Sequence record: LR756511.1
DNA: 64,000 bases
Strand: one strand, 5' to 3'
A program made the translations under genes and the position numbers. Below the pieces are notes generated by a model. That model had not been told where the DNA came from. It was given only the letters and a program-made list of their open reading frames with translations, and ran no database searches. This document shows, in pieces, positions 248 through 60,054 of the stretch (positions within the stretch are counted from its first letter, which is position 1; each line of letters starts with the position of its first letter).

Positions 248-446
248 TTAGGACTTCCTCTCGCATTTCGTACAGCTCATCCTCACAGCGGATTCTGTTT
301 AGCCTATTACAGACCCTTTGAACCTTGGCCGAATCTCTAGAGATTACATTATCTCGATAGAGATTCGGCCAAGACTCTATGTAATCCACCAACGGATACC
401 ATTGTCCGCGAGCGGATCGCCACCATAGCTTATACAACTTTATCAT
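237..446 (-). CDS. hypothetical protein
   Basis: 69 aa ORF overlapping the PARP stop (ATGA-type coupling). Confidence 0.5.
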   Translation of the reverse strand: MIKLYKLWWRSARGQWYPLVDYIESWPNLYRDNVISRDSAKVQRVCNRLNRIRCEDELYEMREEVLNEV

Positions 447-2032
447 GTGTCAAATTCGCAAAGGTAGCGAAGCTGATTTTGCCTACCATCGTAAATAATC
501 CATTCATTATTCACGACGCCAGATCGTCCAGCCTTACCGAACACGCAATGGTGTCCCTTTGGAGGCGAAGCATAACCGCCAGAAGAAGGAGCTACATAAG
601 GGCTTCCAAGGACCACATCGCAAGCAAACATGAAGGCGGCACGACCACGCACGTTGCCATCACCAGACGACCAATAAGAGCCGCGAAGTGACGTATAACC
701 AGCAGATTTCCGCCAATCGTCAGCGAAGTAGCAGCCTGGACCGAACATCGCACCAGTAATTACAACGCCGACTAGTTGCTTGGGTAGTCGCAAACCTTCT
801 CTTAAAATACCACGGACATTAACAGAACGGGTGCCGTGGAATAGGAGAGCGGTATTTGTGCTGTGATAACGCTTTAAGAGAGTGTTGTCATCCAAGTCAT
901 TTCTTTCTGTCGGCTGGTAGGGCGGTCGTTCCGTAATGCGGGGCTTCTCATCAATAATACCGCCCTGAGTCTTTTCAACCTTTTCCTGATCGCCGTTACG
1001 GGCAACCTTCCACATATTCTTGATCTTCATGTTGCCAACGCCCGCATGACGATTGGCACTGGCCTTCGGCCACCAATTATAGAGGAATTTTCCAAGAGCC
1101 GTGCTAGGATCAATCCATTCCATCTTAAGTGGCATTCCATCAAACGGATCGCTTGCATCTGTATCCGAATCCGTCGTAACATATAGAGCAGATTCGAATG
1201 CGTCAAGGTCCGCAAGCCAAGCGAGAATGTTATCCTTATTTAAAAGCCAATCCTTCGGCGGGCAATGTAGAGCCTTCTTTTTGGGAATGCGGCTATACAT
1301 GACGCGAGTAAGCTGATTAAGCTCATTGTCAGCAACTTGATCGTCAACATTATCGCCAACCTTAATGAGCCGCTTCTGCGCTTCCACAAGAATATCGCGG
1401 GCTTCATTAATTGACTTTTGAGTTGGAAGGCAAGCGTCGGCCATTGACCCGCGAGTATAAGAAACCGTAGCCACGTTTAAATCTTTCATTAAACGCAGCG
1501 TATTGGTGTCAATGGTAATGGAAGGCTTTTTAGCGCCATTGCCATTCATGACTGCTGGCTTTGCCGTAGTCTTTGCGCCTTCGTTAAGCTTAATCGTCTT
1601 CGCGTCAGGAAGACCCGTTGAGCGAGTTGCCATAGGACGCACTAAATAGCAGTCCTTATTTGGCTTGGCTTGAAGCGTGCGAATGCCCGCTACAGTCGTC
1701 CATTGCCCACGCTTATCATTCTTTTCGTGAAGTTGCTTGGCGAATTCATACTGAGCATCGGATTCGCTGCTGCATTCAACAAATTGGAATTGAGGTGAAG
1801 AGGCACCTGTGCGACCCCACTCAAAATAAGCATACCACTTCTTAGTCTTGCGGTTTTGGACTACCGCACCGTGATAATACTTGTTACTATCCTTGCCTGA
1901 CTGATCGAAGCAGCCAAGGTCGGCAATCTTACAGTTTTCGAATTGACCATCTTCTGTTGCTGGCGGTCCAAAACACTGAAAATCTTCGGGAGTAGAACTG
2001 CCAGGAAAAGTGCTTTTGTCAAGTTTAGCCAT
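443..2032 (-). CDS. poly(ADP-ribose) polymerase-like protein (WGR + helical regulatory + ART catalytic domains)
   Basis: WGR motif (YFEWGRTG), helical region, catalytic LLFHGT / MFGPGCYFA / NEWIIYD with an intact H-Y-E triad. Confidence 0.9.
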   Translation of the reverse strand: MAKLDKSTFPGSSTPEDFQCFGPPATEDGQFENCKIADLGCFDQSGKDSNKYYHGAVVQNRKTKKWYAYFEWGRTGASSPQFQFVECSSESDAQYEFAKQLHEKNDKRGQWTTVAGIRTLQAKPNKDCYLVRPMATRSTGLPDAKTIKLNEGAKTTAKPAVMNGNGAKKPSITIDTNTLRLMKDLNVATVSYTRGSMADACLPTQKSINEARDILVEAQKRLIKVGDNVDDQVADNELNQLTRVMYSRIPKKKALHCPPKDWLLNKDNILAWLADLDAFESALYVTTDSDTDASDPFDGMPLKMEWIDPSTALGKFLYNWWPKASANRHAGVGNMKIKNMWKVARNGDQEKVEKTQGGIIDEKPRITERPPYQPTERNDLDDNTLLKRYHSTNTALLFHGTRSVNVRGILREGLRLPKQLVGVVITGAMFGPGCYFADDWRKSAGYTSLRGSYWSSGDGNVRGRAAFMFACDVVLGSPYVAPSSGGYASPPKGHHCVFGKAGRSGVVNNEWIIYDGRQNQLRYLCEFDT

Positions 2033-6699: not shown

Positions 6700-7161
6700 A
6701 TGAAGACTTTCAATCAGTGGCTTGAATCCGTGGAATCCGTTTCAAACCTTACCCGTGAACTTGTTAAGAACCCTCTTGACCAACATCTTAGGATGGTCAC
6801 AGCAGACGCTCTTGAAGAAAGTGGCGAACACACTGCTAGCTTCCTTCGAATTAATGATCCAATCTACAACGTTCAATATTTTGAAACTTTCGTTAGGGCT
6901 GGCGCCATTCTACCTCAAGATAGGCGGGGCAATCCTACTGTTATAAACGAGATATTCACTTGGGACAATTTAATGAAATTTCTACGCAAGCATGGTCTTG
7001 TACAAATGCACGCCGATGAAGACGGTGCATGGACCCGTCAAGACAGACAATATATAAACGGTCACAGAAATCATAGGCTTGTAATTACGTTAGGGAATGG
7101 TCGCCCACTCCCTAACGTAATTCGCAACATCATTAATCAAATCCTTACGCTGCCTCGCTAG
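6700..7161 (+). CDS. putative head-packaged protein with TIGR02996-like domain
   Basis: [10 protein letters not shown]-terminus; [19 protein letters not shown] resembles TIGR02996; TATATA box 5 nt before ATG. Confidence 0.6.
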
Positions 7162-8458
7162 CTTCCACAGCCACCAACGGCTTCTCGCCACGCACAACTG
7201 CTTCATCGACAATGTAAGTCTGCCCATTGCCGTTGGTAAGGTTGAATTGGATTTCAAGCATCATTTCTTCAACCACGCTACGAAGGGCACGCGCACCCGT
7301 ATCAGACTTCAAGGCGCGCTTAGCAATTTCGCGGATCGCACCTTCTGAGAACTCAAGGTTGGCATTGTTATAACGGAAGAGTTTGCGATACTGCTTGAGT
7401 AACGCATTCTGAGGCTCCGTCAGAACCTTAACCAACGACTCTTCATTCAATTCTTGAAGCGCCGTAAGCACAGGAACACGACCCACGAATTCGGGAATCA
7501 TACCGAAATGGATAAGGTCATCCGTCGTTGTTTGAGCGAGCAGCCAATCACACTGTTTCTTCTTATCGGTGTCACACTCATCAATCGTTGCGCCGAAACC
7601 AATACTTCGCTTGCCAACTCGCTTAGCAATAATGTCATCAAGACCAACGAATGCGCCACCAACGATAAAGAGGATGTTAGTGGTGTCAATCTGGATATAT
7701 TGCTGTTCGGGATGCTTACGGCCACCATGCGGAGGAACATTGGCTAGCGTTCCTTCAAGCATCTTGAGCAATGCCTGCTGAACGCCTTCGCCTGAAACGT
7801 CACGGGTAATAGAAACATTCTGGCTCTTCTTGCCGATCTTGTCGATTTCATCAATATAAATGATGCCGCACTGTGCCCGTTCCAAATCAAAATCCGCAGC
7901 ACGAATTAATCGCAAAAGCAAGTTCTCAACGTCTTCACCGACATATCCAGCTTCGGTCAAAGTAGTAGCATCACCAATCGCAAAAGGAACATCAAGAATC
8001 TTGGCTAGCGTTTGGCACAGCAATGTCTTTCCAGAGCCAGTTGGTCCAAGGAGAAGGACGTTTGCCTTGTCGATAACAACGTTTTCAAGTTCGTCGCCAG
8101 AACCAGCAACGGCACGACGCACACGGTCTTCATCCACTAAACGCTTATAATGGTTGCTGACAGCCACAGAAAGCACTTTTTTGGCACGATCCTGACCAAT
8201 CACATACTTGTTTAACTGCTCGACAATTTCCTTCGGTGTCGGGATTCGCTTAGGGACATGTACAGAAGGGTTTTGCTTCAAGACTCGTTCGCAATCCTTA
8301 AGACATGATGGGCAAACGTATACTGGAGATTCCTGTGCGGCTCGATTCGGGTTGTTTGTGCTACCTGGACCCTCTACAAGCTGCTTTACCTCAGCTTCTG
8401 CCTTGCCACAGAAATCACAAAATAATGGTGGACGATCTTTGGAACGCTTACGGCTCAT
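7145..8458 (-). CDS. clpX: ATP-dependent Clp protease ATP-binding subunit ClpX
   Basis: C4 zinc-binding domain, [33 protein letters not shown] loop; AAGGAG RBS before MSRKRSK. Confidence 0.97.
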
Positions 8459-8525
8459 AAAATTTCTCCTTTGGCAATTGTCGATGTTGACGCACACTCC
8501 CACTTTACTCGGAAATCCCGCAATG

Positions 8526-11614: not shown

Positions 11615-11797
11615 ATGTTAGTGCTGAGTCGCAAGAAAGACGAAACCATCCTCATCAAGCAGCCAGGACAGAAACCCATCAAGATTACCGTCGTTAGAAT
11701 AGACAATAAGAATAAGGTCCGACTTGGCATCGAAGCCGATAAGGATGTCTCAGTCTTAAGGTCTGAACTTGAAGTAGTGAACGGACGTTTATCTTAG
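11615..11797 (+). CDS. csrA: carbon storage regulator CsrA family RNA-binding protein
   Basis: MLVLSRKKDETILI...KVRLGIEADKDVSVLRSEL; AAAGGAG RBS. Confidence 0.85.
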   Translation: MLVLSRKKDETILIKQPGQKPIKITVVRIDNKNKVRLGIEADKDVSVLRSELEVVNGRLS

Positions 11798-12769
11798 AAG
11801 GTCGCTAATTGAGCCACCTTCATCATGAATGCGGCGAATAGCCTTGGCGAATAGTTTTGTACAAGACAAAACCTTGATCTTTTTGCTATGGTCATAATGC
11901 AGACAACGAACCTTATCAATGGTGTCTGTCACCACGATATTGTTTATTTTGGCTAAATTAGAACCAACATCGCCCACGAAAAGACCGTGCGTAGCACATG
12001 CACCCCAAAAATTTCCGCCAAATTTTTCCACGGTTTCAGCCGCCTTAGCCAGCGTGGAACCACTGGAAATCATGTCATCAACAGCAATGATGATCTTTCC
12101 CTCAATGTTGTCGCTGATCGTATTGCCGTGAACCTCGCTTCCTTCCCGAATCTTATCCATGTGAACGAGTGGAATCTTCTTAGCTAGCTTTGCTGCCAAG
12201 GACTTACGGAAACGGTCGGCGCGCCCAGCCCCACCACTATCAGGTGCAAGTACGGCTATTTCCTCTTGCTGATTTCGTAAACATATGGCCACTTCATCTA
12301 CGATTAGGTTCTTAGCTTCTAGATGGTCTGTAGGGATTCTAATGGAATTCTGGAAAACGGCAAGGCTATGCACATCCATGCTGAGAACACGATCCGCCCC
12401 TGCTGCTTCCAGCATCATCGCCACATACTTCGTGGTGATAGAAGCTCGGCTTTCCGTCTTTCTATCTTGTCTTTGATAGCCGAAGTAGGGAATTACTGCC
12501 GTCACTCGTTCCGCAGACGCATCTTTTAACGAACCGATAAAATAGAGAAGCTTGATAAACTTGTCATTCACGCTCTCATGTTCATCCGTATAGAGAGACT
12601 GAATCACGTAGACATCACAGCCACGAACGTTTTCATCCGCCCGAACGTACGGCTCGCGGTCAGGAAAATACTTCTCAACGTGCCTGTTCAAATTTATATC
12701 TAAGCTCTCAGCCACACTCTCAGCAAATTTATGCGTCCCGTTCAGGCCGAATATTCTTAGACTTTTCAT
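11789..12769 (-). CDS. prs: ribose-phosphate pyrophosphokinase
   Basis: FPDREPYV, VIPYFGYQRQDRK, DVHS, APDSGG, VDDMISSGSTL. Confidence 0.95.
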   Translation of the reverse strand: MKSLRIFGLNGTHKFAESVAESLDINLNRHVEKYFPDREPYVRADENVRGCDVYVIQSLYTDEHESVNDKFIKLLYFIGSLKDASAERVTAVIPYFGYQRQDRKTESRASITTKYVAMMLEAAGADRVLSMDVHSLAVFQNSIRIPTDHLEAKNLIVDEVAICLRNQQEEIAVLAPDSGGAGRADRFRKSLAAKLAKKIPLVHMDKIREGSEVHGNTISDNIEGKIIIAVDDMISSGSTLAKAAETVEKFGGNFWGACATHGLFVGDVGSNLAKINNIVVTDTIDKVRCLHYDHSKKIKVLSCTKLFAKAIRRIHDEGGSISDLLR

Positions 12770-12917
12770 TCTTATTCTCCCATTGCTTAAATGACCATTC
12801 CCCCCAAATTGCTCCAATCTCATCCACGACTGGAATGTTAGCCAAAAGCATGAGCAATCCAAATGGGGTACACAACATTATAACAAAGAACGGAATTGAC
12901 AGTATCTTTCCTAACAT
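12729..12917 (-). CDS. small membrane protein
   Basis: hydrophobic 62 aa ORF overlapping the folD stop. Confidence 0.4.
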   Translation of the reverse strand: MLGKILSIPFFVIMLCTPFGLLMLLANIPVVDEIGAIWGEWSFKQWENKNEKSKNIRPERDA

Positions 12918-42149: not shown

Positions 42150-43064
42150 TTAAGATAAAAGAGTGTTTCGCAAGCTATTTCTTGCCCACTTTTCCCCTGT
42201 GAGCCTTTCATATGCTTCAACATACTTGTTCCGAGTTTTTTCAATGATATCAGGCGGCAAAGGAGGAGGGGAACTCTCTTTGTCCCAACCGCTATTTTCA
42301 GCCCAATCCCGAATAAACTGCTTGTCAAAAGAAGGAATTGACGCATCCAACTTATAAGCATCTAAAGGCCAAAACCGCGAGCTATCAGGCGTAATAACCT
42401 CATCAATCAAAACAACAGTATTGTTCAAATAAGGCAAAATGCCCCATTCAAACTTAGTATCCGCAATAATAATGCCATTAGCCCAAGCAACCTGAGCCGC
42501 TTCTGTATATAATTCAACACTTAAAGCTTCAATTTCAGCAGCTAATTCAACACCAATTTCTTTTGCCATAACATCAAAGGACACGTTTTCGTCATGTCCC
42601 GTTGCCGCTTTTATGGCTGGTGTAAATATAGGTTTTGGAAATTGTTGATTTTGCCTTAAATTTGGTGGCAAAGGAATACCGCAAACACTACCTGTTTTCT
42701 GATATTCCTTCCACGCGGACCCAGCCAAATAACCTCGCACCACACATTCAAACGGAATCACTTCGGCTCGCTCTACCAACATCGTTCTGCTACGAAACTC
42801 TGGCTCCCTAAAGTCTTCGGGCATCTGATTTAGGTCCGTAGCGATCAAATGATACGGCATTTCCAGCTTTTTTGCCCAAAAACACGAAATTGCCTGAAGG
42901 ATTTTTCCTTTATCTTGAATGGTGTTGGGGAAAACATGATCGAACGCACTAACCCGATCCGTTGTAACAATTATTAACATTGTCTCGCCAAGCTCGTAAA
43001 CATCCCGAACCTTCCCGCGACGACAAACGTAATTATCAACTTTTGTTTCTCGTAAACCTTCCAT
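42150..43064 (-). CDS. purC: phosphoribosylaminoimidazole-succinocarboxamide (SAICAR) synthase
   Basis: GKVRDVY, TDRVSAFD, ECVVRGYLAGSAW, ADTKFEWG, DEVITPDSSRFW, FDKQFIRDW. Confidence 0.97.
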   Translation of the reverse strand: MEGLRETKVDNYVCRRGKVRDVYELGETMLIIVTTDRVSAFDHVFPNTIQDKGKILQAISCFWAKKLEMPYHLIATDLNQMPEDFREPEFRSRTMLVERAEVIPFECVVRGYLAGSAWKEYQKTGSVCGIPLPPNLRQNQQFPKPIFTPAIKAATGHDENVSFDVMAKEIGVELAAEIEALSVELYTEAAQVAWANGIIIADTKFEWGILPYLNNTVVLIDEVITPDSSRFWPLDAYKLDASIPSFDKQFIRDWAENSGWDKESSPPPLPPDIIEKTRNKYVEAYERLTGEKWARNSLRNTLLS

Positions 43065-45113: not shown

Positions 45114-45401
45114 CTAGTCATCATAATAATCGCGGCTTAGTCGCGCGATTAATTTGTTCTTCTGCTCGGCATCCTTCACCATTTCCGTGAGTTTCTTTCT
45201 CTGCGACTGAATCTTCTCTTCCTTCTCTTTTATCAATTCTTGATAATTAAAGCTATCATAAACCTGACGGAATCCACAAAAAGAAATCAAAAGAAACGCC
45301 ATCGCAACAGCAAAACTATTGCTGTTTGCCATATAAATCCCATAAAATAATGGCACCCACCCCGTAGTAATAAAATACAGGGTGAGAAGAAAGCGTTGCA
45401 T
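45114..45401 (-). CDS. membrane protein with coiled-coil tail
   Basis: two TM segments then heptads. Confidence 0.5.
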   Translation of the reverse strand: MQRFLLTLYFITTGWVPLFYGIYMANSNSFAVAMAFLLISFCGFRQVYDSFNYQELIKEKEEKIQSQRKKLTEMVKDAEQKNKLIARLSRDYYDD

Positions 45402-46174
45402 TATAATGTCAATATCTCACAGCCAGAACCAGTAACCAAAATCGTATGCTCAAATTGAGCCGATAGTTTACCATCCGTAGTTCTTACTGTCCATTGATCG
45501 TTCTCGTCTACCAATACATCCGCCCCGCCCAAACAAATCATAGGTTCAATAGTGAACGTCATTCCAGCAAACATTCGAACGCCATCTGTCTTCTGAGCTA
45601 CGTGACAAATCTGCGGCGGTTCATGAAATTCAATACCAACGCCATGCCCACAGAACTGCTCCACCACCGTACAGCCCTGTAGTATAGCATACGAGTAGAT
45701 ACTATGTCCAATTTCCCCCGTTAAAGCTCCAGGCTTAACTTGCTTTATGCCTAAGTCTAAACACTTCTTTGTAACTTCTAGAAGATGCTCTGCATCTTTT
45801 GAAATTTGCCCAACAGGAAACGTGGAAGCAGTATCCCCATAATACCCGTCGAGAATCGTCGTCACATCTATTCCTACGATGTCGCCTTCTTTTAATTCAG
45901 TGTCATCGGGAATACCGTGGCAGACTACCTCGTTGAGAGAGATGCAACTGCTTTTTGGATATGGTGGCTGTTTTGGACACGCTCCTTTATAGCCTAATGT
46001 TGCGGCGTGCGCACCATGATCCCGAATGAAGTCAGCCATCAATTTATCAAGTTCCGATGTTTTCTTCCCTGGCACCACATACGGTTCGATAAATTTCAAA
46101 GTTGCAGCAGCGAGTTTGCAACTCTTACGGATGCCTTCAATTTGTCGATTACTTTTTATAAGGATATGCTTCAT
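45401..46174 (-). CDS. map: methionine aminopeptidase type I
   Basis: SLNEVVCHGIP, DVTT..DGYYGDT, FCGHGVG..FHE.P, EPM, SAQFEHT. Confidence 0.97.
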   Translation of the reverse strand: MKHILIKSNRQIEGIRKSCKLAAATLKFIEPYVVPGKKTSELDKLMADFIRDHGAHAATLGYKGACPKQPPYPKSSCISLNEVVCHGIPDDTELKEGDIVGIDVTTILDGYYGDTASTFPVGQISKDAEHLLEVTKKCLDLGIKQVKPGALTGEIGHSIYSYAILQGCTVVEQFCGHGVGIEFHEPPQICHVAQKTDGVRMFAGMTFTIEPMICLGGADVLVDENDQWTVRTTDGKLSAQFEHTILVTGSGCEILTL

Positions 46175-46290
46175 TGTGGCTATTCTGCCGTGAAGCCAGA
46201 AATTTCGCAATGGATTTTTGTCGTGAAATTTCCATTTGCAAAACAATTTCGTCCGATTACTATATATCGTGAAAGGAGGCATTCGACCAT

Positions 46291-46764
46291 ATGCCAGCCA
46301 TCCACGATGAAGCAAATCAAGTTGTCACCGTCATTCAGGACTACATTCACAAGGAAAAATTGACAGAATTGCTTATTAGGCTAGATGAAGATATAGGAAA
46401 GAAAAGCGAAAATGAAATTACTAAAGCCTTCCTGTCTCATCTAAGAAAAGTGGTTGATAAACCACTTCCGCCCCCGCCCATGTGGTTATGGATTTCATTT
46501 TACAGTCTTGTGGTGTTTCACATTCTCCTTGTCATCGCTGTTATTTTCTCGTTCTTTGTATTGCCGTTCCTTGCGCCGTGGTATGTTGCGGTGCCATGTA
46601 TGACCTTTATTTGGTTTTTCTCCACAACAAGGGTCGATTGTCAGCTAACGAATCTCGAAAACTACATACGCAGACAACTAGGCTTAAAACGAATTGGCGG
46701 ATTTGTTGGGCATTATTTCCTCAAACCTGCTAGATTAGTTTTAAGGAGATATGGATTACGATGA
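46291..46764 (+). CDS. DUF2784-like membrane protein
   Basis: VFHILL...CQLTNLENYIRR..G...GFVGHY; AAAGGAGG RBS. Confidence 0.7.
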   Translation: MPAIHDEANQVVTVIQDYIHKEKLTELLIRLDEDIGKKSENEITKAFLSHLRKVVDKPLPPPPMWLWISFYSLVVFHILLVIAVIFSFFVLPFLAPWYVAVPCMTFIWFFSTTRVDCQLTNLENYIRRQLGLKRIGGFVGHYFLKPARLVLRRYGLR

Positions 46765-54313: not shown

Positions 54314-54518
54314 ACTTTTTCCATTTCGTGTTAGGTGTTACCATACCCCAATAACGACCTTCTATCAATCTCGCGTTTCCCGTATGGTCACTAACTTCTT
54401 TGACTTCATATTGAAGAACTTCGCCCCAAACAAGAAAGAATTCACCCGTATCCGTGGTTGAAACGCGAGCTTGTTTCTCTTCGACATTGCACAAATAAGC
54501 CCGTTCGAAATCATTCAA
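54300..54518 (-). CDS. hypothetical protein
   Basis: coupled ORF. Confidence 0.45.
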   Translation of the reverse strand: MNDFERAYLCNVEEKQARVSTTDTGEFFLVWGEVLQYEVKEVSDHTGNARLIEGRYWGMVTPNTKWKKYVSS

Positions 54519-54993
54519 TTCCCTCTTCTATCAGGTCTTCGCGTAATCCCGTTAATACTTCACCAAGCCAATTCGTGCCCTTCCAGTTATTTCGATCCTC
54601 GATCCCTGGCTCACCTTCACGCATTCCAATGCCCCAAATGCAATCATAAGGACTTGCTTCAACCAGCGTTCTTCCTTTGGTTGCCAGCAACTTTTCTAAT
54701 AGATCAGAATTTTGCGTGAACTTAGCATAATTGCCTTCATAGACAACCTCTCTGGCAATTGCATTCCAGCGGTCAGCGTTAAAGCCTTTGACCTGTCGGC
54801 CTAGCTTCTTTTGGTCCCTTGGATGCTCAGCCGCCATGATTTGAGCCAGCGTGTCTTCGTCGCCAAACAGTTTGGCTTTGCTTGCCATCATATACTGTTC
54901 AGCACAGTTATACTTGATTCCATCGACTTCAAACTCAGATTCCTCCCATTGAGACAGGAACCCATGCCAGAAGAACAAAAATTGTTCACTCAT
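54511..54993 (-). CDS. NADAR (YbiA/DUF1768) family ADP-ribosyl hydrolase
   Basis: LSQW..S.F, CAEQYMMASKA.LFGD, KKLGRQV..F, KFTQN..L...LLAT, EASPYDCIWGIG, GTNWLGEVL. Confidence 0.95.
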   Translation of the reverse strand: MSEQFLFFWHGFLSQWEESEFEVDGIKYNCAEQYMMASKAKLFGDEDTLAQIMAAEHPRDQKKLGRQVKGFNADRWNAIAREVVYEGNYAKFTQNSDLLEKLLATKGRTLVEASPYDCIWGIGMREGEPGIEDRNNWKGTNWLGEVLTGLREDLIEEGIE

Positions 54994-55174
54994 CTTGTGT
55001 CCTCAAGAATTCCCTTGCTGCTTCCAAAGCCGCTTCATTATGAGCTTTACAGATAGCTCTGTTCTTTTCGTTTTGTTCCTTGTCGTTTGTCACATAGAAA
55101 TACATTAACTCAACGGGACACGTTTGCACCTTAACATTCCCTACAAATATCTCTCGTAAAGTTCCTTCTTCCAT
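54986..55174 (-). CDS. hypothetical protein
   Basis: coupled ORF. Confidence 0.45.
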   Translation of the reverse strand: MEEGTLREIFVGNVKVQTCPVELMYFYVTNDKEQNEKNRAICKAHNEAALEAAREFLRTQDE

Positions 55175-55599
55175 TGCTGATAGACTTCCTTAACCTTTGG
55201 ATTACCGAGAACCTTTGTGCCAATTTCGACAACTAAAGGATTTGGCTGATGCCAAGACATATCAAGCATCTTAATCGCTTTTTCTGGCCCTACTTTGCTA
55301 GCCGCGATTAAATACGCCATTGCGGAGCTTCGGGATATTCCCGCTCGACACGCAACAATAAGCTCGTCCTTATCCTTAGCCCATTCAATAACTTGTTTGA
55401 TTTGATCTTCAGTTGCAATTTCATAGCCAGGACGTGCCATCTCAACATCGTCAAACTTAACGCAAATACAATCCTTTGCGATAGAGGTTATAAGATGTTC
55501 TACTTCGTGTCCAAAAGTCTCACCGATTGCAACTATTGGAATATTTGGATTGTAGATAAGCGTCGAATGTGCTTCTCTACGGGACATAATTCTAATCAT
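55141..55599 (-). CDS. protein-tyrosine phosphatase-like (CX5R) protein
   Basis: VACRAGISRSSA, F.D, PNPLVV. Confidence 0.85.
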   Translation of the reverse strand: MIRIMSRREAHSTLIYNPNIPIVAIGETFGHEVEHLITSIAKDCICVKFDDVEMARPGYEIATEDQIKQVIEWAKDKDELIVACRAGISRSSAMAYLIAASKVGPEKAIKMLDMSWHQPNPLVVEIGTKVLGNPKVKEVYQQWKKELYERYL

Positions 55600-56081: not shown

Positions 56082-56243
56082 TTAATTTAATTGCACGGAA
56101 TTATAACCACATCTCTTGCATGGCTCTCCAGTCGCGGTCGTCCTATTATTCCACTGATGACCTAGCCACTGACACAAGAGCTTGTGTTTTAGCCACTGAA
56201 ACCAAGTTGGACGTGGCTCATAGAATTCTTGCCATCCATTCAT
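56082..56243 (-). CDS. small Cys/His protein (53 aa, DUF1660-like; not in the ORF track)
   Basis: KLLCQWLGHQW...CKRCG; ATGA overlap with the upstream stop. Confidence 0.5.
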   Translation of the reverse strand: MNGWQEFYEPRPTWFQWLKHKLLCQWLGHQWNNRTTATGEPCKRCGYNSVQLN

Positions 56244-57133
56244 TTCTCGCTCCAACACTTTGCTAATTTATAACCGCGTGTGGAAGCATTTTCTTTGAAT
56301 GCCTTATCAAATGCTTCTTTGTATTCCTGCGACGATCCAAAACAAGGCCAAGACCAGCTTTTGCCGTGAATCTCATCTTTTACCTTGCAAGGAACGTACT
56401 TCATTACATCTTCTACAATACAATCTGCAAGAACGTCCCGACCGCATGTGTCTAGGCCACCATAAACTAATTCGCCAGCAAGCCTTTTGTTGTCCTGAAT
56501 TAAATTCCTTGCCTTTTCATCGTCAACAATTACACCAAAGTAGTCACTGGCAATTCTTTTGACTTCCTTGATGTCTTTTAATTCAACTTCCAGTTTCATA
56601 GCTTTGCAGCCCCCCTCTGGTGGAACAGCATCAATAGCAACCAATTTGTAAGTATCTTTGTCTACAACGAAAACACCATCTTCTCGGACTCTACCTTGGC
56701 CTAATCCACGCGATCTAAAAACCACTTCATTTTTGTCTAATAGAAACTGGAGGATTTTACCTTTTGGCGTATCTAATACTTCAATTTCAGCCTTTAAATA
56801 ATCATTTTCAATCTTAAGGTCTTTGACGACATGACTTACAGAATCAAAATGAATCAATAATTCCTTGGGCATTCCCAACTCGCCCATCATGGTTCTACTC
56901 TGCACAAGTTCCCTATGATCTTGAACAATCTTCTCTAATACGTCTCTAGTATAGATTCTGTTATTGCCGTTGGGAACATCAGCGCGTAATATGTCGAATG
57001 TAAGGTCTTTTCTTTCTGCCGCCGCGTTAGAAGCGGTAATAGAACCTTGGCCAACCTCCCATTCTGATTGTCCAGCGACAAGTGCTGTTAGGCCATAGGC
57101 GCACTCAGCAATAAAACAACGCCGATTAATCAT
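56240..57133 (-). CDS. twin-arginine leader + inactive T4 gp21-like prohead protease + C-terminal extension
   Basis: NRRCFI leader; N.N.RIY, GELGMP, VSH, LDTPKG, FRSRGLG, AIDAV. Confidence 0.75.
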   Translation of the reverse strand: MINRRCFIAECAYGLTALVAGQSEWEVGQGSITASNAAAERKDLTFDILRADVPNGNNRIYTRDVLEKIVQDHRELVQSRTMMGELGMPKELLIHFDSVSHVVKDLKIENDYLKAEIEVLDTPKGKILQFLLDKNEVVFRSRGLGQGRVREDGVFVVDKDTYKLVAIDAVPPEGGCKAMKLEVELKDIKEVKRIASDYFGVIVDDEKARNLIQDNKRLAGELVYGGLDTCGRDVLADCIVEDVMKYVPCKVKDEIHGKSWSWPCFGSSQEYKEAFDKAFKENASTRGYKLAKCWSEK

Positions 57134-57561
57134 TTCTTCCTCTCCACCATAGCCTTAACAAAAATCTCAGCCATTCGCCAGCCCGAATCAGTTGGCTCAA
57201 AGCGGGCAATTGGCGACCTGAACTTTGGATGATCTGAAAAATGAGGGTCGATTAACTTCTGTTTTTTAAGGGACTCCCAATCGGTCCCCTTATAAACCAT
57301 AATCTTTCTACCTTCATAGTTCTTGCAGTCAGGATACCGAATCTCGACAATTAAATAATCGCCAATCCCTAAAGTGTCAATTACTTCGAACTTTGCTGGG
57401 TCTGGATTACCAGATGGAACAGGCGGCGCAGTAGATGGAACAGCATCACAACTAGCCCTACAATATCGCGCATCAGAACTACTTCCGAAAAGTTTAATGC
57501 CCATTATTCCATCCAGTGTTTGCCACGGAACAAGAACACGATCCAGTCCAAAGCAACGCAC
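57130..57561 (-). CDS. conserved phage hypothetical protein
   Basis: NPDP..F...YPDCKNYEGRKI...DPHF...PIARFEPT..GW. Confidence 0.6.
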   Translation of the reverse strand: MRCFGLDRVLVPWQTLDGIMGIKLFGSSSDARYCRASCDAVPSTAPPVPSGNPDPAKFEVIDTLGIGDYLIVEIRYPDCKNYEGRKIMVYKGTDWESLKKQKLIDPHFSDHPKFRSPIARFEPTDSGWRMAEIFVKAMVERKK

Positions 57562-58789: not shown

Positions 58790-59569
58790 TTAATCGTAGA
58801 CGCTAGACCCGCCTCCTGTATTGCCGCCTCTACGCGGTCCAGTCCAGTGAGTGTAGATGTCTCTTGCTTCTGGATCGACACAATGCCTGTAATCCGATGG
58901 AATGTCCGACTTATGCGTAGTATTCATCGCATCTATAATTGCCCTTAACCCTTTGTTGGTAATTCCAGGCAATTTTTCCATCATGCTGCCGCCTGTATGA
59001 TGCACGGCATTGTTTAACCTGTCGATCAGAAAGCCTATATGTTTACCATAATGTATTAGACCTTGTTCGCCAATGCCCTTGCTTGCCCCAATAGCGTTTT
59101 CTATTGTTTGTGCAAGCTGCATATAAAATTCCGATGCATCATTCCATAAGTCATTACGACGCTTCATATCTGAACGATATGTCGTCGTCATAGCTCTAGC
59201 AATCAATTTAGGCTTTTCGTGCGGGGTTGCCTTCTTAATTACTTCGATAGGAATTTCAGGCTTTCCACCTACTAAATCTACTCTCGGAACGCCGCCCTGT
59301 TTAGCATATCTGCCAACATAAGCTCCTGTTCCATAGTATTTCTCTAATTGCTCGATGAAAACCTGTGTGAAAACAGTAACATATAGTTCGCCTATTTCCT
59401 GAATAATAAATACCGCTTTTTGCAGATTCTCTTCAGGAATTTGATCGTTCTGTAACCCTGTATTAATGTAATAGAAGCTACAGATAATATCAGGTGTTAT
59501 TTCTCTAAACCTCTGCCCGCCCCACTCATTAAACAACTGTTGTCCGATAAATGCTTCGAAACTTTTCAT
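58790..59569 (-). CDS. putative head-packaged protein (MKSFEAFI N-terminus)
   Basis: CTS-like start; TAGATA box 4 nt before ATG. Confidence 0.55.
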   Translation of the reverse strand: MKSFEAFIGQQLFNEWGGQRFREITPDIICSFYYINTGLQNDQIPEENLQKAVFIIQEIGELYVTVFTQVFIEQLEKYYGTGAYVGRYAKQGGVPRVDLVGGKPEIPIEVIKKATPHEKPKLIARAMTTTYRSDMKRRNDLWNDASEFYMQLAQTIENAIGASKGIGEQGLIHYGKHIGFLIDRLNNAVHHTGGSMMEKLPGITNKGLRAIIDAMNTTHKSDIPSDYRHCVDPEARDIYTHWTGPRRGGNTGGGSSVYD

Positions 59570-60054
59570 GCATTATCTAAGCATTTATCGGACAACTCTT
59601 TGATACAATTTTTCAGAATTACGGCCAAAGCTTCATCCCCATCCTGCGTATAACCTAATAGCAGCTTTGACTCTTCGATATAATCTTGCGTATACTCAAA
59701 AAAGCCGTTTATTGGTCGATCTAGTCGCTTTCGAATATTGTCAATTCGATCAGCCATCTTGATCTTCTTAGCTTCCTTGGAGGCGTGAATATAGTGAGAA
59801 AAGTCCCTGACACTATTGTTATAAATATCTGGAGGGTTTGTAAGCTCTTTTACGATATCTGTAACCTTATCGCCTATAAATGTCCTTAACACTTCTTCCC
59901 GCAGGCGAGTGTCTTCTAGAATATCGTGAAGGTAGGCAGCGGCTAATTCTTCATCGGTAGGATTATTTAGAAGTTTTGCAACTCGCTCGGCGTGGTCGGC
60001 GCGTGAATTAACTAACAAGGTTCTGGCAATAGACTTAGCTCTTTCAACTAACAT
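59566..60054 (-). CDS. HD-domain hydrolase, MESH1/small alarmone hydrolase-like
   Basis: AAAYLHDILEDT, V.ELT, IKMADRIDNIR. Confidence 0.85.
   Translation of the reverse strand: MLVERAKSIARTLLVNSRADHAERVAKLLNNPTDEELAAAYLHDILEDTRLREEVLRTFIGDKVTDIVKELTNPPDIYNNSVRDFSHYIHASKEAKKIKMADRIDNIRKRLDRPINGFFEYTQDYIEESKLLLGYTQDGDEALAVILKNCIKELSDKCLDNA

What the first reader, a model, noticed from the sequence alone, without database searches (positions are those of the whole stretch)
56240..57133. Catalytically dead prohead protease (gp21/S77) paralog
Seen: GELGMP and VVFRSRGLG. In T4 gp21 the catalytic His85 lies in GELNHP and Ser140 is the first Ser of GVSSRG, so His is replaced by Met and Ser by Arg while the surrounding fold motifs are kept. 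The protein also has a Tat-like leader and an unrelated C-terminal part from MKLEVELKD (possibly a fused downstream gene). Inference: a non-catalytic scaffold-binding competitor or decoy.
Basis: partly seen in the sequence, partly recalled or inferred. Interest (0 to 1): 0.72.

Follow-up and report, generated by a model that had tools for sequence, protein, structure and literature searches.

The report
Dead capsid-protease relative with export-like leader
A huge bacteriophage carries, far from its working capsid-maturation protease, a second copy-like gene that has lost the catalytic residues, belongs to a large unnamed phage-only family, often carries an export-type leader, and is joined here to an unrelated small gene at a run of six G's.

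Summary
Window 56240-57133(-) encodes 297 aa. Residues ~44-173 are homologous to T4 gp21 (Pfam S77 above cut-off, PHROG 6e-27, PDB 5jbl). Met88 sits at the catalytic His and Arg140 at the catalytic Ser.

It is not a decayed copy of this phage's own protease. An intact enzyme (GELDHP, GMSSRGVG) lies in the head module of the same 595-kb genome (LR756511.1), outside the window.

The window gene belongs to an old, apparently single-origin clade. It holds at least 100 clusters at 50% identity, known only from metagenomic phage DNA and unnamed. The proteins are short (median 159 aa), with His lost, Arg at the nucleophile position, and the third triad Asp mostly Asn. They lack both end segments of real proteases. 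They lie among replication and nucleotide-metabolism genes, never in head modules.

About half carry an M-[DN]-R-R-x-F-L-x-E leader plus ~13 uncharged residues. This looks like a Tat signal but scores below curated thresholds.

Residues 179-297 are a separate orphan helical protein family. The join is a G6 run; the neighbouring frame gives the family-typical end AAKL and a TGA overlapping the next ATG.

Function is unknown; an exported or membrane-targeted binding pseudo-enzyme is my best guess.

The parts
56240..57133 (-). Annotated 297-aa ORF: an S77-like pseudo-protease read through into an orphan 119-aa protein.
   Evidence: Identical to LR756511.1 242243-243133.
57068..57133 (-). N-terminal leader, residues 1-22 (MINRRCFIAECAYGLTALVAGQ). 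It has twin Arg at residues 4-5 and then F-I-A-E. A 13-residue uncharged stretch follows. It is preceded by the Shine-Dalgarno-like GGAGAGG. Its ATG overlaps the TGA of the upstream gene.
   Evidence: AF2 predicts a helix at residues 4-20. It is the only ORF in the 595-kb genome with this leader.
56615..57004 (-). S77 (T4 gp21-type) protease-fold domain, residues ~44-173.
   Evidence: Pfam S77 covers 49-171, PHROG 207 covers 48-173, 5jbl covers 48-173. hhalign against canonical proteases gives E=1e-40. Foldseek top hit is 5jbl.
56870..56872 (-). Met88 codon, at the position of the catalytic His (T4 His85), within GELGMP (56867-56884).
   Evidence: Canonical proteins have His in 103/103; variants have Met in 57/102.
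56714..56716 (-). Arg140 codon, at the position of the nucleophile Ser (T4 Ser140), within VVFRSRGLG (56699-56725).
   Evidence: Canonical proteins have Ser in 103/103. Among non-canonical relatives, about 100 of 120 have Arg.
56630..56632 (-). Asp168 codon, at the position of the third triad residue. It is retained here but relaxed across the clade (Asn 45, Asp 27, His 13).
   Evidence: The triad is His/Ser/Asp per PMC5694885.
56610..56615 (-). G6 homopolymer (cccccc on the + strand) at the junction of the two protein families. In the neighbouring frame right after it the sequence reads ...GAAKL-stop.
   Evidence: AAKL is the commonest C-terminal tail of the family.
56596..56599 (-). ATGA: the ATG of Met179 (start of the orphan protein) overlaps a TGA stop in the neighbouring frame. 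The same coupling is seen at the ORF's own start (57130-57133).
56243..56599 (-). Orphan helical protein, residues 179-297. Elsewhere it is a stand-alone 107-131-aa family with conserved LDTxGR and WxWP motifs.
   Evidence: 17 stand-alone representatives start at this Met. AF2 pLDDT is 91. No Pfam family. No PDB fold match. Two unnamed viral proteins share the fold.
57130..57561 (-). Upstream 143-aa ORF of unknown function, translationally coupled (ATGA) to the target.
   Evidence: No Pfam hit.

Best explanation
Two genes are read as one.

Gene 1 (residues 1 to ~178, or ~182 in the neighbouring frame) belongs to an old, phage-only clade derived from the T4 gp21/S77 capsid-maturation protease. 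The clade keeps the fold. It has replaced the catalytic His (Met here) and Ser (Arg, nearly invariant) and relaxed the triad Asp. It has shed the N-terminal autoinhibitory segment and the C-terminal tail of the real enzyme. It is therefore a pseudo-protease, not a broken copy of the phage's own protease, which is intact in the head module about 283 kb away.

Inferred: the gene is expressed with early or accessory genes. Its N-terminal twin-arginine-type leader sends the folded domain to the cell membrane or periplasm by the host Tat route. There it acts as a binding protein through the remodelled cleft, where Arg replaces the nucleophile of an enzyme that cleaves after Glu. The target is unknown.

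Gene 2 (residues 179-297) is an unrelated orphan helical protein. It is joined to gene 1 by a one-base length difference in a G6 run, which may be a real mutation or an assembly error. It probably also has its own start (Shine-Dalgarno-like GAGGGGGG, then ATG).

Shown: homology, residue replacements, the intact paralogue, clade size and single split, missing termini, gene contexts, leader conservation, two-family composition, and the frame structure at the junction.
Inferred: export, binding role, timing of expression.
For: - Homology and residue mapping.
- Intact protease next to scaffold and major capsid protein: L010 26953-27621 with GELDHP and GMSSRGVG.
- Clade: among 224 S77-domain proteins, 103 are canonical (H, S, R142 and D168 all 103/103). 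About 100 have Arg at the nucleophile position, a median length of 159 aa, and a C-tail of 8 aa against 40 aa.
- The canonical/variant split needs one change on the tree.
- Contexts:
  - RNR-large, RNR-small, [gene], CTP synthase.
  - DNA pol A, DnaB, Ogg, [gene], dCMP deaminase, gp32, RecA.
  - helicase ... [gene] ... RNR-large.
  - a ClpX-like ATPase overlapping the gene.
- Absent from 185,579 bacterial and archaeal species genomes except three weak hits. In the cultured-phage collection no close relative came up; the only other variant I identified there is in another uncultured huge phage.
- Leader, across 48 representatives:
  - RR 48/48, F 44/48, L 38/48.
  - median uncharged stretch 13 residues, mean Kyte-Doolittle hydropathy (KD) 1.5.
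  - followed by K or R in 28/48.
  - Tat HMMs hit relatives just under threshold: P0002 PF10518 19.7 bits against 22.7, P0095 TIGR01409 14.7 against 16.7.
- Fusion: stand-alone homologues start at Met179.
Against: - No Tat model hits the window protein itself. Its leader has Cys and Ile where the consensus has x and L, and an acidic residue right after the motif.
- About half of the clade has no leader at all, so the core function cannot depend on export.
- The AF2 model is poor (pLDDT below 50) for residues 138-186, which include Arg140, so the local geometry is not modelled.
- No activity, localisation or expression data exist.
- The host, and whether it has a Tat system, is unknown.
- Illumina-based curated assemblies rarely miscount a G6 run, so the fusion may be real.
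Confidence: 0.6

Rival explanations
1. Cytoplasmic dominant-negative or decoy. The dead protease enters the scaffolding core, or mixes into pentamers with the real protease, and tunes or competes with head maturation.
For: The fold and many surface motifs are shared with canonical enzymes: PNxNxRIY, SH, TPxG, GxG. T4 gp21 works as a pentamer in the core (PMC9958956), so mixed oligomers are conceivable. phiKZ-like giant phages also keep short diverged protease paralogues (PMC5694885).
Against: It lacks the N-terminal and C-terminal segments of canonical proteases. The C-terminal region is inferred to target the enzyme into the prohead (PMC5694885). The gene is never in a head module in the ten variant loci examined. 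It has an export-type leader. It belongs to an old clade independent of the resident protease.
Confidence: 0.1
2. The leader is a capsid-targeting propeptide rather than an export signal. Like the T4 internal-protein CTS (MKTYQEFIAE), MINRRCFIAE would be recognised in the prohead and cut after Glu10 by the real protease. The dead protease would then be a packaged, perhaps injected, internal protein.
For: F7-I8-A9-E10 is identical in position to the T4 CTS. gp21-type enzymes cut after L/I-x-E. Glu is at +5 or +6 after RR in 34 of 48 leaders. Canonical relatives carry an N-terminal FLLFE-type segment.
Against: The motif is followed by a ~13-residue uncharged stretch absent from the T4 CTS. RR is invariant, which a CTS does not need. 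No other ORF in the 595-kb genome carries the leader. Genes lie outside structural modules. Half of the clade has no leader.
Confidence: 0.1
3. Anti-defence decoy or sponge. The pseudo-active site binds host immune sensors that are triggered by prohead-protease cleavage (CBASS CD-NTase activation loops), or binds a small immune signal, shielding the phage.
For: Prohead proteases activate CBASS by cutting CD-NTase loops (PMC12991175). The gene sits among likely counter-defence and accessory genes: NADAR, HD, PARP-like, phosphatase. The 735-kb phage's copy also lies next to a NADAR-like gene. A conserved Arg, Asn and His cluster could bind an acidic peptide or a phosphate.
Against: Purely circumstantial. 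The export-type leader on this copy would remove it from cytoplasmic sensors. No hit in any library searched other than S77/PHROG 207; PADLOC was not searched.
Confidence: 0.1
4. Still an enzyme. Catalysis has moved to other residues, for example the invariant Ser100-His101 with Asp168.
For: Ser100 and His101 are invariant in 102/102 variants, and Asp168 is retained here.
Against: Ser100 and His101 are equally conserved (101/103) in canonical enzymes that use the classical His and Ser. T4 gp21 lacks them. Adjacent residues on a strand rarely form a dyad. Asp168 is Asn or His in most variants.
Confidence: 0.05

Closest known systems
T4 gp21 prohead core protease (MEROPS/Pfam S77; PDB 5jbl)
   Same: Same fold and clear sequence homology. 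Shared motifs are PNxNxRIY, GxLxxP, TPxG and xxGxG. An authentic member is encoded in the same genome.
   Different: The catalytic His is Met and the Ser is Arg. There is no N-terminal autoinhibitory segment and no ~40-aa C-terminal tail. The gene is outside the head module and has an added N-terminal RR leader.
SPN3US gp117, 201phi2-1 gp206 and PhiPA3 gp143: short diverged paralogues of the S80 prohead protease in phiKZ-like giant phages (PMC5694885)
   Same: A second, short (136-145 aa), highly diverged protease homologue that lacks the C-terminal part. It is encoded away from the real protease in giant phages and its function is unknown.
   Different: Those derive from the S80 (phiKZ gp175) lineage and keep Ser and Asp, losing only the aligned His. 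No leader is reported. A direct sequence relationship to this clade was not tested.
Twin-arginine (Tat) signal peptides (PF10518 / TIGR01409)
   Same: An N-terminal RR-x-F-[LI] motif and a short, mildly hydrophobic h-region. Relatives often have a basic residue after it and small residues at possible cleavage sites.
   Different: The n-region is very short (M-x-x-RR) and there is a conserved acidic residue 2-3 positions after F-L. Scores are below curated cut-offs in relatives, and there is no hit for this protein.
T4 capsid-targeting sequence of internal proteins IPII/IPIII (MKTYQEFIAE)
   Same: A ten-residue N-terminus ending F-I-A-E, matching the L/I-x-E cleavage rule.
   Different: It is followed by a hydrophobic stretch, has an invariant RR, and is not shared with other proteins of this genome.

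Membership tests
Peptidase_S77 (T4 gp21-type prohead protease) | Sequence match to the family model above the curated threshold | tested here: met
   PF03420 scores 33.8 bits against a cut-off of 27, E=3e-8. PHROG 207 gives 6e-27. hhalign against canonical proteases gives E=1e-40.
Peptidase_S77 (T4 gp21-type prohead protease) | Catalytic His (T4 His85, GELxHP) | tested here: not met
   Met88 is at that column. Canonical proteins have His in 103/103.
Peptidase_S77 (T4 gp21-type prohead protease) | Nucleophile Ser (T4 Ser140, GxSSRG) | tested here: not met
   Arg140 is at that column. Canonical proteins have Ser in 103/103.
Peptidase_S77 (T4 gp21-type prohead protease) | Third triad residue Asp | tested here: met
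   Asp168 aligns with the invariant Asp of canonical enzymes. It is not conserved in the variant clade (Asn 45, Asp 27, His 13).
Peptidase_S77 (T4 gp21-type prohead protease) | Protease fold (herpesvirus-protease-like) | tested here: met
   Foldseek top hits are 5jbl chains A to C (E=2e-4, probability 1.0), then herpesvirus proteases. The model is confident for residues 44-137 only.
Peptidase_S77 (T4 gp21-type prohead protease) | Encoded in the head module (portal, protease, scaffold, major capsid protein) and carrying N- and C-terminal processing or targeting segments | tested here: not met
   The neighbours are tRNAs, NADAR, a phosphatase and an HD protein. The C-tail of the clade is 8 aa against 40 aa. 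The genome's true protease occupies the head module.
Tat (twin-arginine) signal peptide | Consensus S/T-R-R-x-F-L-K near the N-terminus | tested here: inconclusive
   The window has N-R-R-C-F-I-A. Across the family RR is 48/48, F 44/48 and L 38/48.
Tat (twin-arginine) signal peptide | Uncharged, mildly hydrophobic h-region of about 12-20 residues, with the c-region often basic | tested here: met
   The window has 13 residues at Kyte-Doolittle hydropathy (KD) 0.97. The family median is 13 residues, mean KD 1.5, with K or R next in 28/48.
Tat (twin-arginine) signal peptide | Score above the curated cut-off of PF10518 or TIGR01409 | tested here: not met
   No hit for the window protein. Relatives score 19.7 against 22.7 and 14.7-15.9 against 16.7 bits.
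Tat (twin-arginine) signal peptide | Export depends on the host TatABC system | not testable with these tools
T4-type capsid-targeting sequence | A ~10-residue N-terminal peptide ending in L/I-x-E | tested here: met
   MINRRCFIAE compared with MKTYQEFIAE.
T4-type capsid-targeting sequence | Cleaved by the prohead protease and directs packaging into the head | not testable with these tools
   There are no proteomic data. The leader is unique in the genome.
Giant-phage diverged protease paralogues (SPN3US gp117 type) | A short second protease homologue, lacking the C-terminal region, encoded apart from the functional protease | tested here: met
   The description of the type is in PMC5694885.
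Giant-phage diverged protease paralogues (SPN3US gp117 type) | Sequence membership in the gp117 family (S80 lineage) | not tested
   gp117 and its relatives were not retrieved. No phiKZ-like paralogue appeared among the listed (top-ranked) tblastn hits.

The most novel reading that the evidence does not exclude
A capsid-maturation protease fold was recruited, after losing catalysis, as a Tat-exported (periplasmic or membrane) phage effector made early in infection. It might act in superinfection exclusion or in binding a host envelope protein. Leaderless cytoplasmic versions in other large phages would share the same ligand-binding cleft. This would define a new, widespread family of phage pseudo-enzymes.
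Probability: 0.35. Interest if true: 0.75.

Novelty: new variant of a known kind. Interest (0 to 1): 0.58.

Why it matters
Non-catalytic relatives of enzymes are often regulators or binders, and phage examples have repeatedly turned out to be host-takeover or counter-defence factors.

This one is not a one-off. It belongs to a family of at least 100 clusters at 50% identity, in large and huge phages, with no name in any source. At the nucleophile position it has a conserved replacement residue (Arg) rather than random decay.

If the leader is a true Tat signal, this would be, as far as my literature searches showed, an unreported case of a capsid-protease fold sent outside the cytoplasm by a phage.

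The work also corrects the gene model. The 297-aa 'fusion' is two genes joined at a homopolymer, which matters for anyone annotating or expressing it.

Tried and rejected
- A second copy inside the window: none found.
- C-terminal part as a TIR or NADase relative: E is about 1 against 7xoz and 7crb. It is rejected because Pfam, PDB Foldseek and the confident AF2 model give no support.
- Conserved two-gene module (S77-like plus orphan): the apparent 80%-coverage hit in Salicola phage SCTP-2 was a canonical protease plus the start of a scaffold protein. The orphan gene is not next to S77-like genes in the other loci.
- Leader as a genome-wide targeting tag: no other ORF in the 595-kb genome has it.
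- Large context harvests from IMG/VR and JGI metagenomes: dominated by canonical proteases. Only 1 of 80 and 2 of 80 loci were variants.
- Bacterial genomes: no relatives with the single protein, and 3 weak hits with a small alignment.
- Two alignments were too diverse for pattern search.
- Literature searches for His85/Ser140 and for 'prohead protease' plus 'twin-arginine' gave nothing relevant. The accession LR756511 is not mentioned in the held library.
- The full-length AF2 model is poor around residues 138-186, so no statement is made on side-chain geometry.

Full report
**Where the window comes from.** The window is identical to positions 186,001-250,000 of LR756511.1, an unannotated 595,163-bp 'uncultured phage' genome. 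It has no N stretches. The region around the finding is a minus-strand run of small ORFs and tRNAs (ten tRNAs in the window). Accessory genes nearby include NADAR, a dual-specificity-type phosphatase and an HD-domain protein. Further away are a PARP-like/WGR protein, a ClpX-like ATPase, PRPP synthetase, SAICAR synthetase and a methionine aminopeptidase. It is not a structural module.

**The observation.** ORF 56240-57133(-) is open for 297 codons.
- Its ATG overlaps the TGA of the upstream 143-aa ORF (ATGA at 57130-57133) and follows a GGAGAGG Shine-Dalgarno-like site.
- Residues ~48-173 match Pfam Peptidase_S77 above the gathering score (33.8 against 27 bits, E=3e-8).
- They also match PHROG 207 'head maturation protease' (6e-27) and the crystal chain of T4 gp21, 5jbl (6e-5).
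- In the 5jbl alignment GELGMP faces GELNAP and VFRSRGLG faces GVASRGLG. The two Ala of 5jbl are the mutated His85 and Ser140, so Met88 and Arg140 occupy the catalytic positions.
- H85A/S140A is the catalytically dead gp21 used experimentally (PMC12991175).
- A profile-profile comparison of the variant family with canonical proteases gives probability 100%, E=1e-40 and the same column mapping.
- An AF2 model is confident for residues 44-137 but poor for 138-186. Foldseek still ranks 5jbl first, followed by herpesvirus proteases.

**An intact protease exists in the same genome.** I fetched the rest of LR756511.1, outside the window, and searched it.
- There is one further S77 match: a 222-aa ORF at L010 26953-27621(-), record position about 525,953-526,621.
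- It has GELDHP and GMSSRGVG.
- It is followed by a 310-aa coiled-coil scaffold-like ORF and a 491-aa capsid-like ORF, and preceded by a 616-aa ORF and an 857-aa portal-like ORF.
- The phage therefore has a normal maturation protease in a normal head module.

**It is a member of a large, old clade, not a recent decay product.** An exhaustive HMMER search of 1.84 billion representatives gave 3,456 proteins at E<=0.001. I combined the best 150 of these with the word-indexed search. Of 224 proteins with the S77 domain:
- 103 are canonical. They have His, Ser140, Arg142 and Asp168 in 103/103 each, a median length of 201 aa, about 38 aa before the core and about 40 aa after it.
- About 100 have Arg at the nucleophile position and no His. 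That position is Met in 57.
- In these variants the Asp168 column is Asn 45, Asp 27, His 13. The median length is 159 aa and only about 8 aa follow the core.
- Motifs away from the triad stay conserved in both groups: PNxNxRIY, Ser100-His101, TPxG, G143.
- On a FastTree of the core, canonical versus Arg-variants needs a single change. With 129 columns this says one origin is not contradicted, not that it is proven.
- The window protein nests among the variants (best identity 52%). The genome's real protease nests among canonical ones (72% to P0191).
- No member carries a name beyond 'hypothetical protein'.
- Apart from three weak hits, the family is absent from one-per-species bacterial and archaeal genomes.
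- In the cultured-phage collection no close relative came up. The only other variant I identified there is in the 735-kb uncultured phage LR756501: GELGYP / FVFRPRAAG, no leader, also next to a NADAR-like gene.

**Context of relatives.** Wherever enough DNA was available, the variant gene lies in replication or nucleotide-metabolism regions of large phages:

| Locus | Neighbourhood |
|---|---|
| L014, L102 | RNR-large, RNR-small, [gene], CTP synthase |
| L098, L191 | DNA pol A, NUDIX, DnaB, Ogg, [gene], dCMP deaminase, gp32, RecA |
| L025 | helicase, [gene], homing endonucleases, RNR-large |
| L100 | ClpX-like ATPase overlapping the gene |
| L112 | M23-like (by eye, not searched) and metallophosphatase-like neighbours |

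None is in a head module. In T4 the N-terminal segment blocks the active site and is self-cleaved, and gp21 acts as a pentamer in the core (PMC9958956). In SPN3US the C-terminal region is inferred to target the enzyme into the prohead (PMC5694885).

**The leader.** 47 of 101 Arg-variants, including this one, begin M-[DN]-R-R-x-F-L-x-E.
- RR is present in 48/48, F in 44/48 and L in 38/48.
- Glu is at +5 or +6 in 34/48.
- An uncharged stretch follows, median 13 residues, mean Kyte-Doolittle hydropathy (KD) 1.5.
- That stretch is followed by Lys or Arg in 28/48.
- This is too short for a membrane span and has the make-up of a Tat signal.
- Tat HMMs hit relatives just under their cut-offs (P0002 19.7 against 22.7 bits, P0003 17.2, P0095 14.7 against 16.7). 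They do not hit the window protein.
- The other half of the clade starts about 8 residues before the core, as a mature exported domain would.

A second reading cannot be dismissed. MINRRCFIAE has F-I-A-E at the same positions as the T4 capsid-targeting sequence MKTYQEFIAE, which gp21 cuts after Glu. Against it are the hydrophobic stretch, the invariant RR, the non-structural context, and the fact that no other ORF in the 595-kb genome carries the leader.

**The C-terminal part and the junction.** Residues 179-297 match 17 stand-alone proteins of 107-131 aa that all start at the Met of MKLEVELKD (57% identity to P0093).
- The family has no Pfam model, no relative in cultured phages and no PDB fold match.
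- Its AF2 model is confident and helical (pLDDT 91). It resembles only two unnamed viral proteins.
- The family is not next to S77-like genes elsewhere.
- The junction lies at a G6 run (56610-56615).
- In the assembled frame the text reads ...AVPPEGGCKA-MKLEVE.
- In the neighbouring frame just after the run it reads ...GAAKL-stop, with the TGA overlapping the ATG of Met179.
- AAKL is the commonest C-terminus of the variant family.
- ATGA coupling is also how the ORF is joined to its upstream neighbour.

The 297-aa ORF is therefore two genes joined by a one-base length difference in a homopolymer. Without reads I cannot say whether that is a real mutation or an assembly error. The protein's cluster has a single member from a single contig.

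**How it most likely works.**
- Shown: it is a pseudo-protease of the S77 lineage. It has a conserved Arg in place of the nucleophile, is stripped of the prohead-related termini, and is encoded with early or accessory genes.
- Inferred: the leader directs Tat-type export or membrane targeting of the folded domain. The remodelled cleft, derived from an enzyme that recognises Glu at P1, now binds rather than cuts. The target is unknown.
- Because half the family is leaderless, the core activity (binding) must also work in the cytoplasm.
- Rivals are a decoy in head assembly, a packaged internal protein with a capsid-targeting propeptide, an anti-defence decoy or sponge prompted by the finding that prohead proteases trigger CBASS (PMC12991175), and relocated catalysis. 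Each keeps roughly 5-10%.

**Comparison with what is known.** The nearest precedent is the short diverged paralogue of the S80 prohead protease in phiKZ-like giant phages: SPN3US gp117, 201phi2-1 gp206 and PhiPA3 gp143. It was called unprecedented in 2017 and is still without a function (PMC5694885). The present clade differs in four ways. It derives from the S77 lineage, loses both His and Ser, fixes Arg at the nucleophile position, and often carries an RR leader. My literature searches found no description of it. I rate it a new variant of a known kind, of moderate-to-good interest. The gene-model correction is ordinary.

Noticed in passing
window 443-2032(-), 7145-8503(-), 11789-12862(-), 42150-43064(-), 45401-46315(-): Accessory genes typical of huge phages. 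In coordinate order they are a PARP-catalytic plus WGR protein, a ClpX-like AAA+ ATPase with zinc finger, PRPP synthetase, SAICAR synthetase and an M24 methionine aminopeptidase.
   Followed up: no
window 54511-54993(-), 55141-55599(-), 59566-60054(-): A NADAR domain protein (E=7.5e-53), a small phosphatase with a CRAGISRS motif (DSPc, below cut-off) and an HD_4 domain protein flank the finding. The S77 variant of the 735-kb phage LR756501 also lies about 800 bp from a NADAR-like gene (L103 6245-6724).
   Followed up: partly
window 34337-63742: Ten tRNA genes, all on the minus strand, interleaved with small ORFs. They include three tRNA-Thr and three tRNA-Arg.
   Followed up: no
L010 32014-34587(-) (LR756511.1, outside the window): The 857-aa portal-like ORF of the head module seems to contain an intein-like insert. 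It begins CVAGDTLIS and ends VMHNC.
   Followed up: no
L100 1001-2769: In one metagenomic contig a ClpX/ClpB-like AAA+ ATPase gene overlaps the start of a leader-bearing S77 variant. This window's genome also encodes a ClpX-like protein. An unfoldase paired with a dead protease fold is a single observation only.
   Followed up: no
L106 2249-3334: A phage-like contig carrying the orphan C-domain gene also encodes a protein with N_methyl plus SBP_bac_10 (DUF1559) domains. From my own knowledge that combination is typical of Planctomycetes, which hints at the host range of that phage group.
   Followed up: no
window 57130-57561(-): The upstream 143-aa ORF is translationally coupled (ATGA) to the target and has no Pfam match. 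With the orphan gene it would make a three-gene coupled string.
   Followed up: partly
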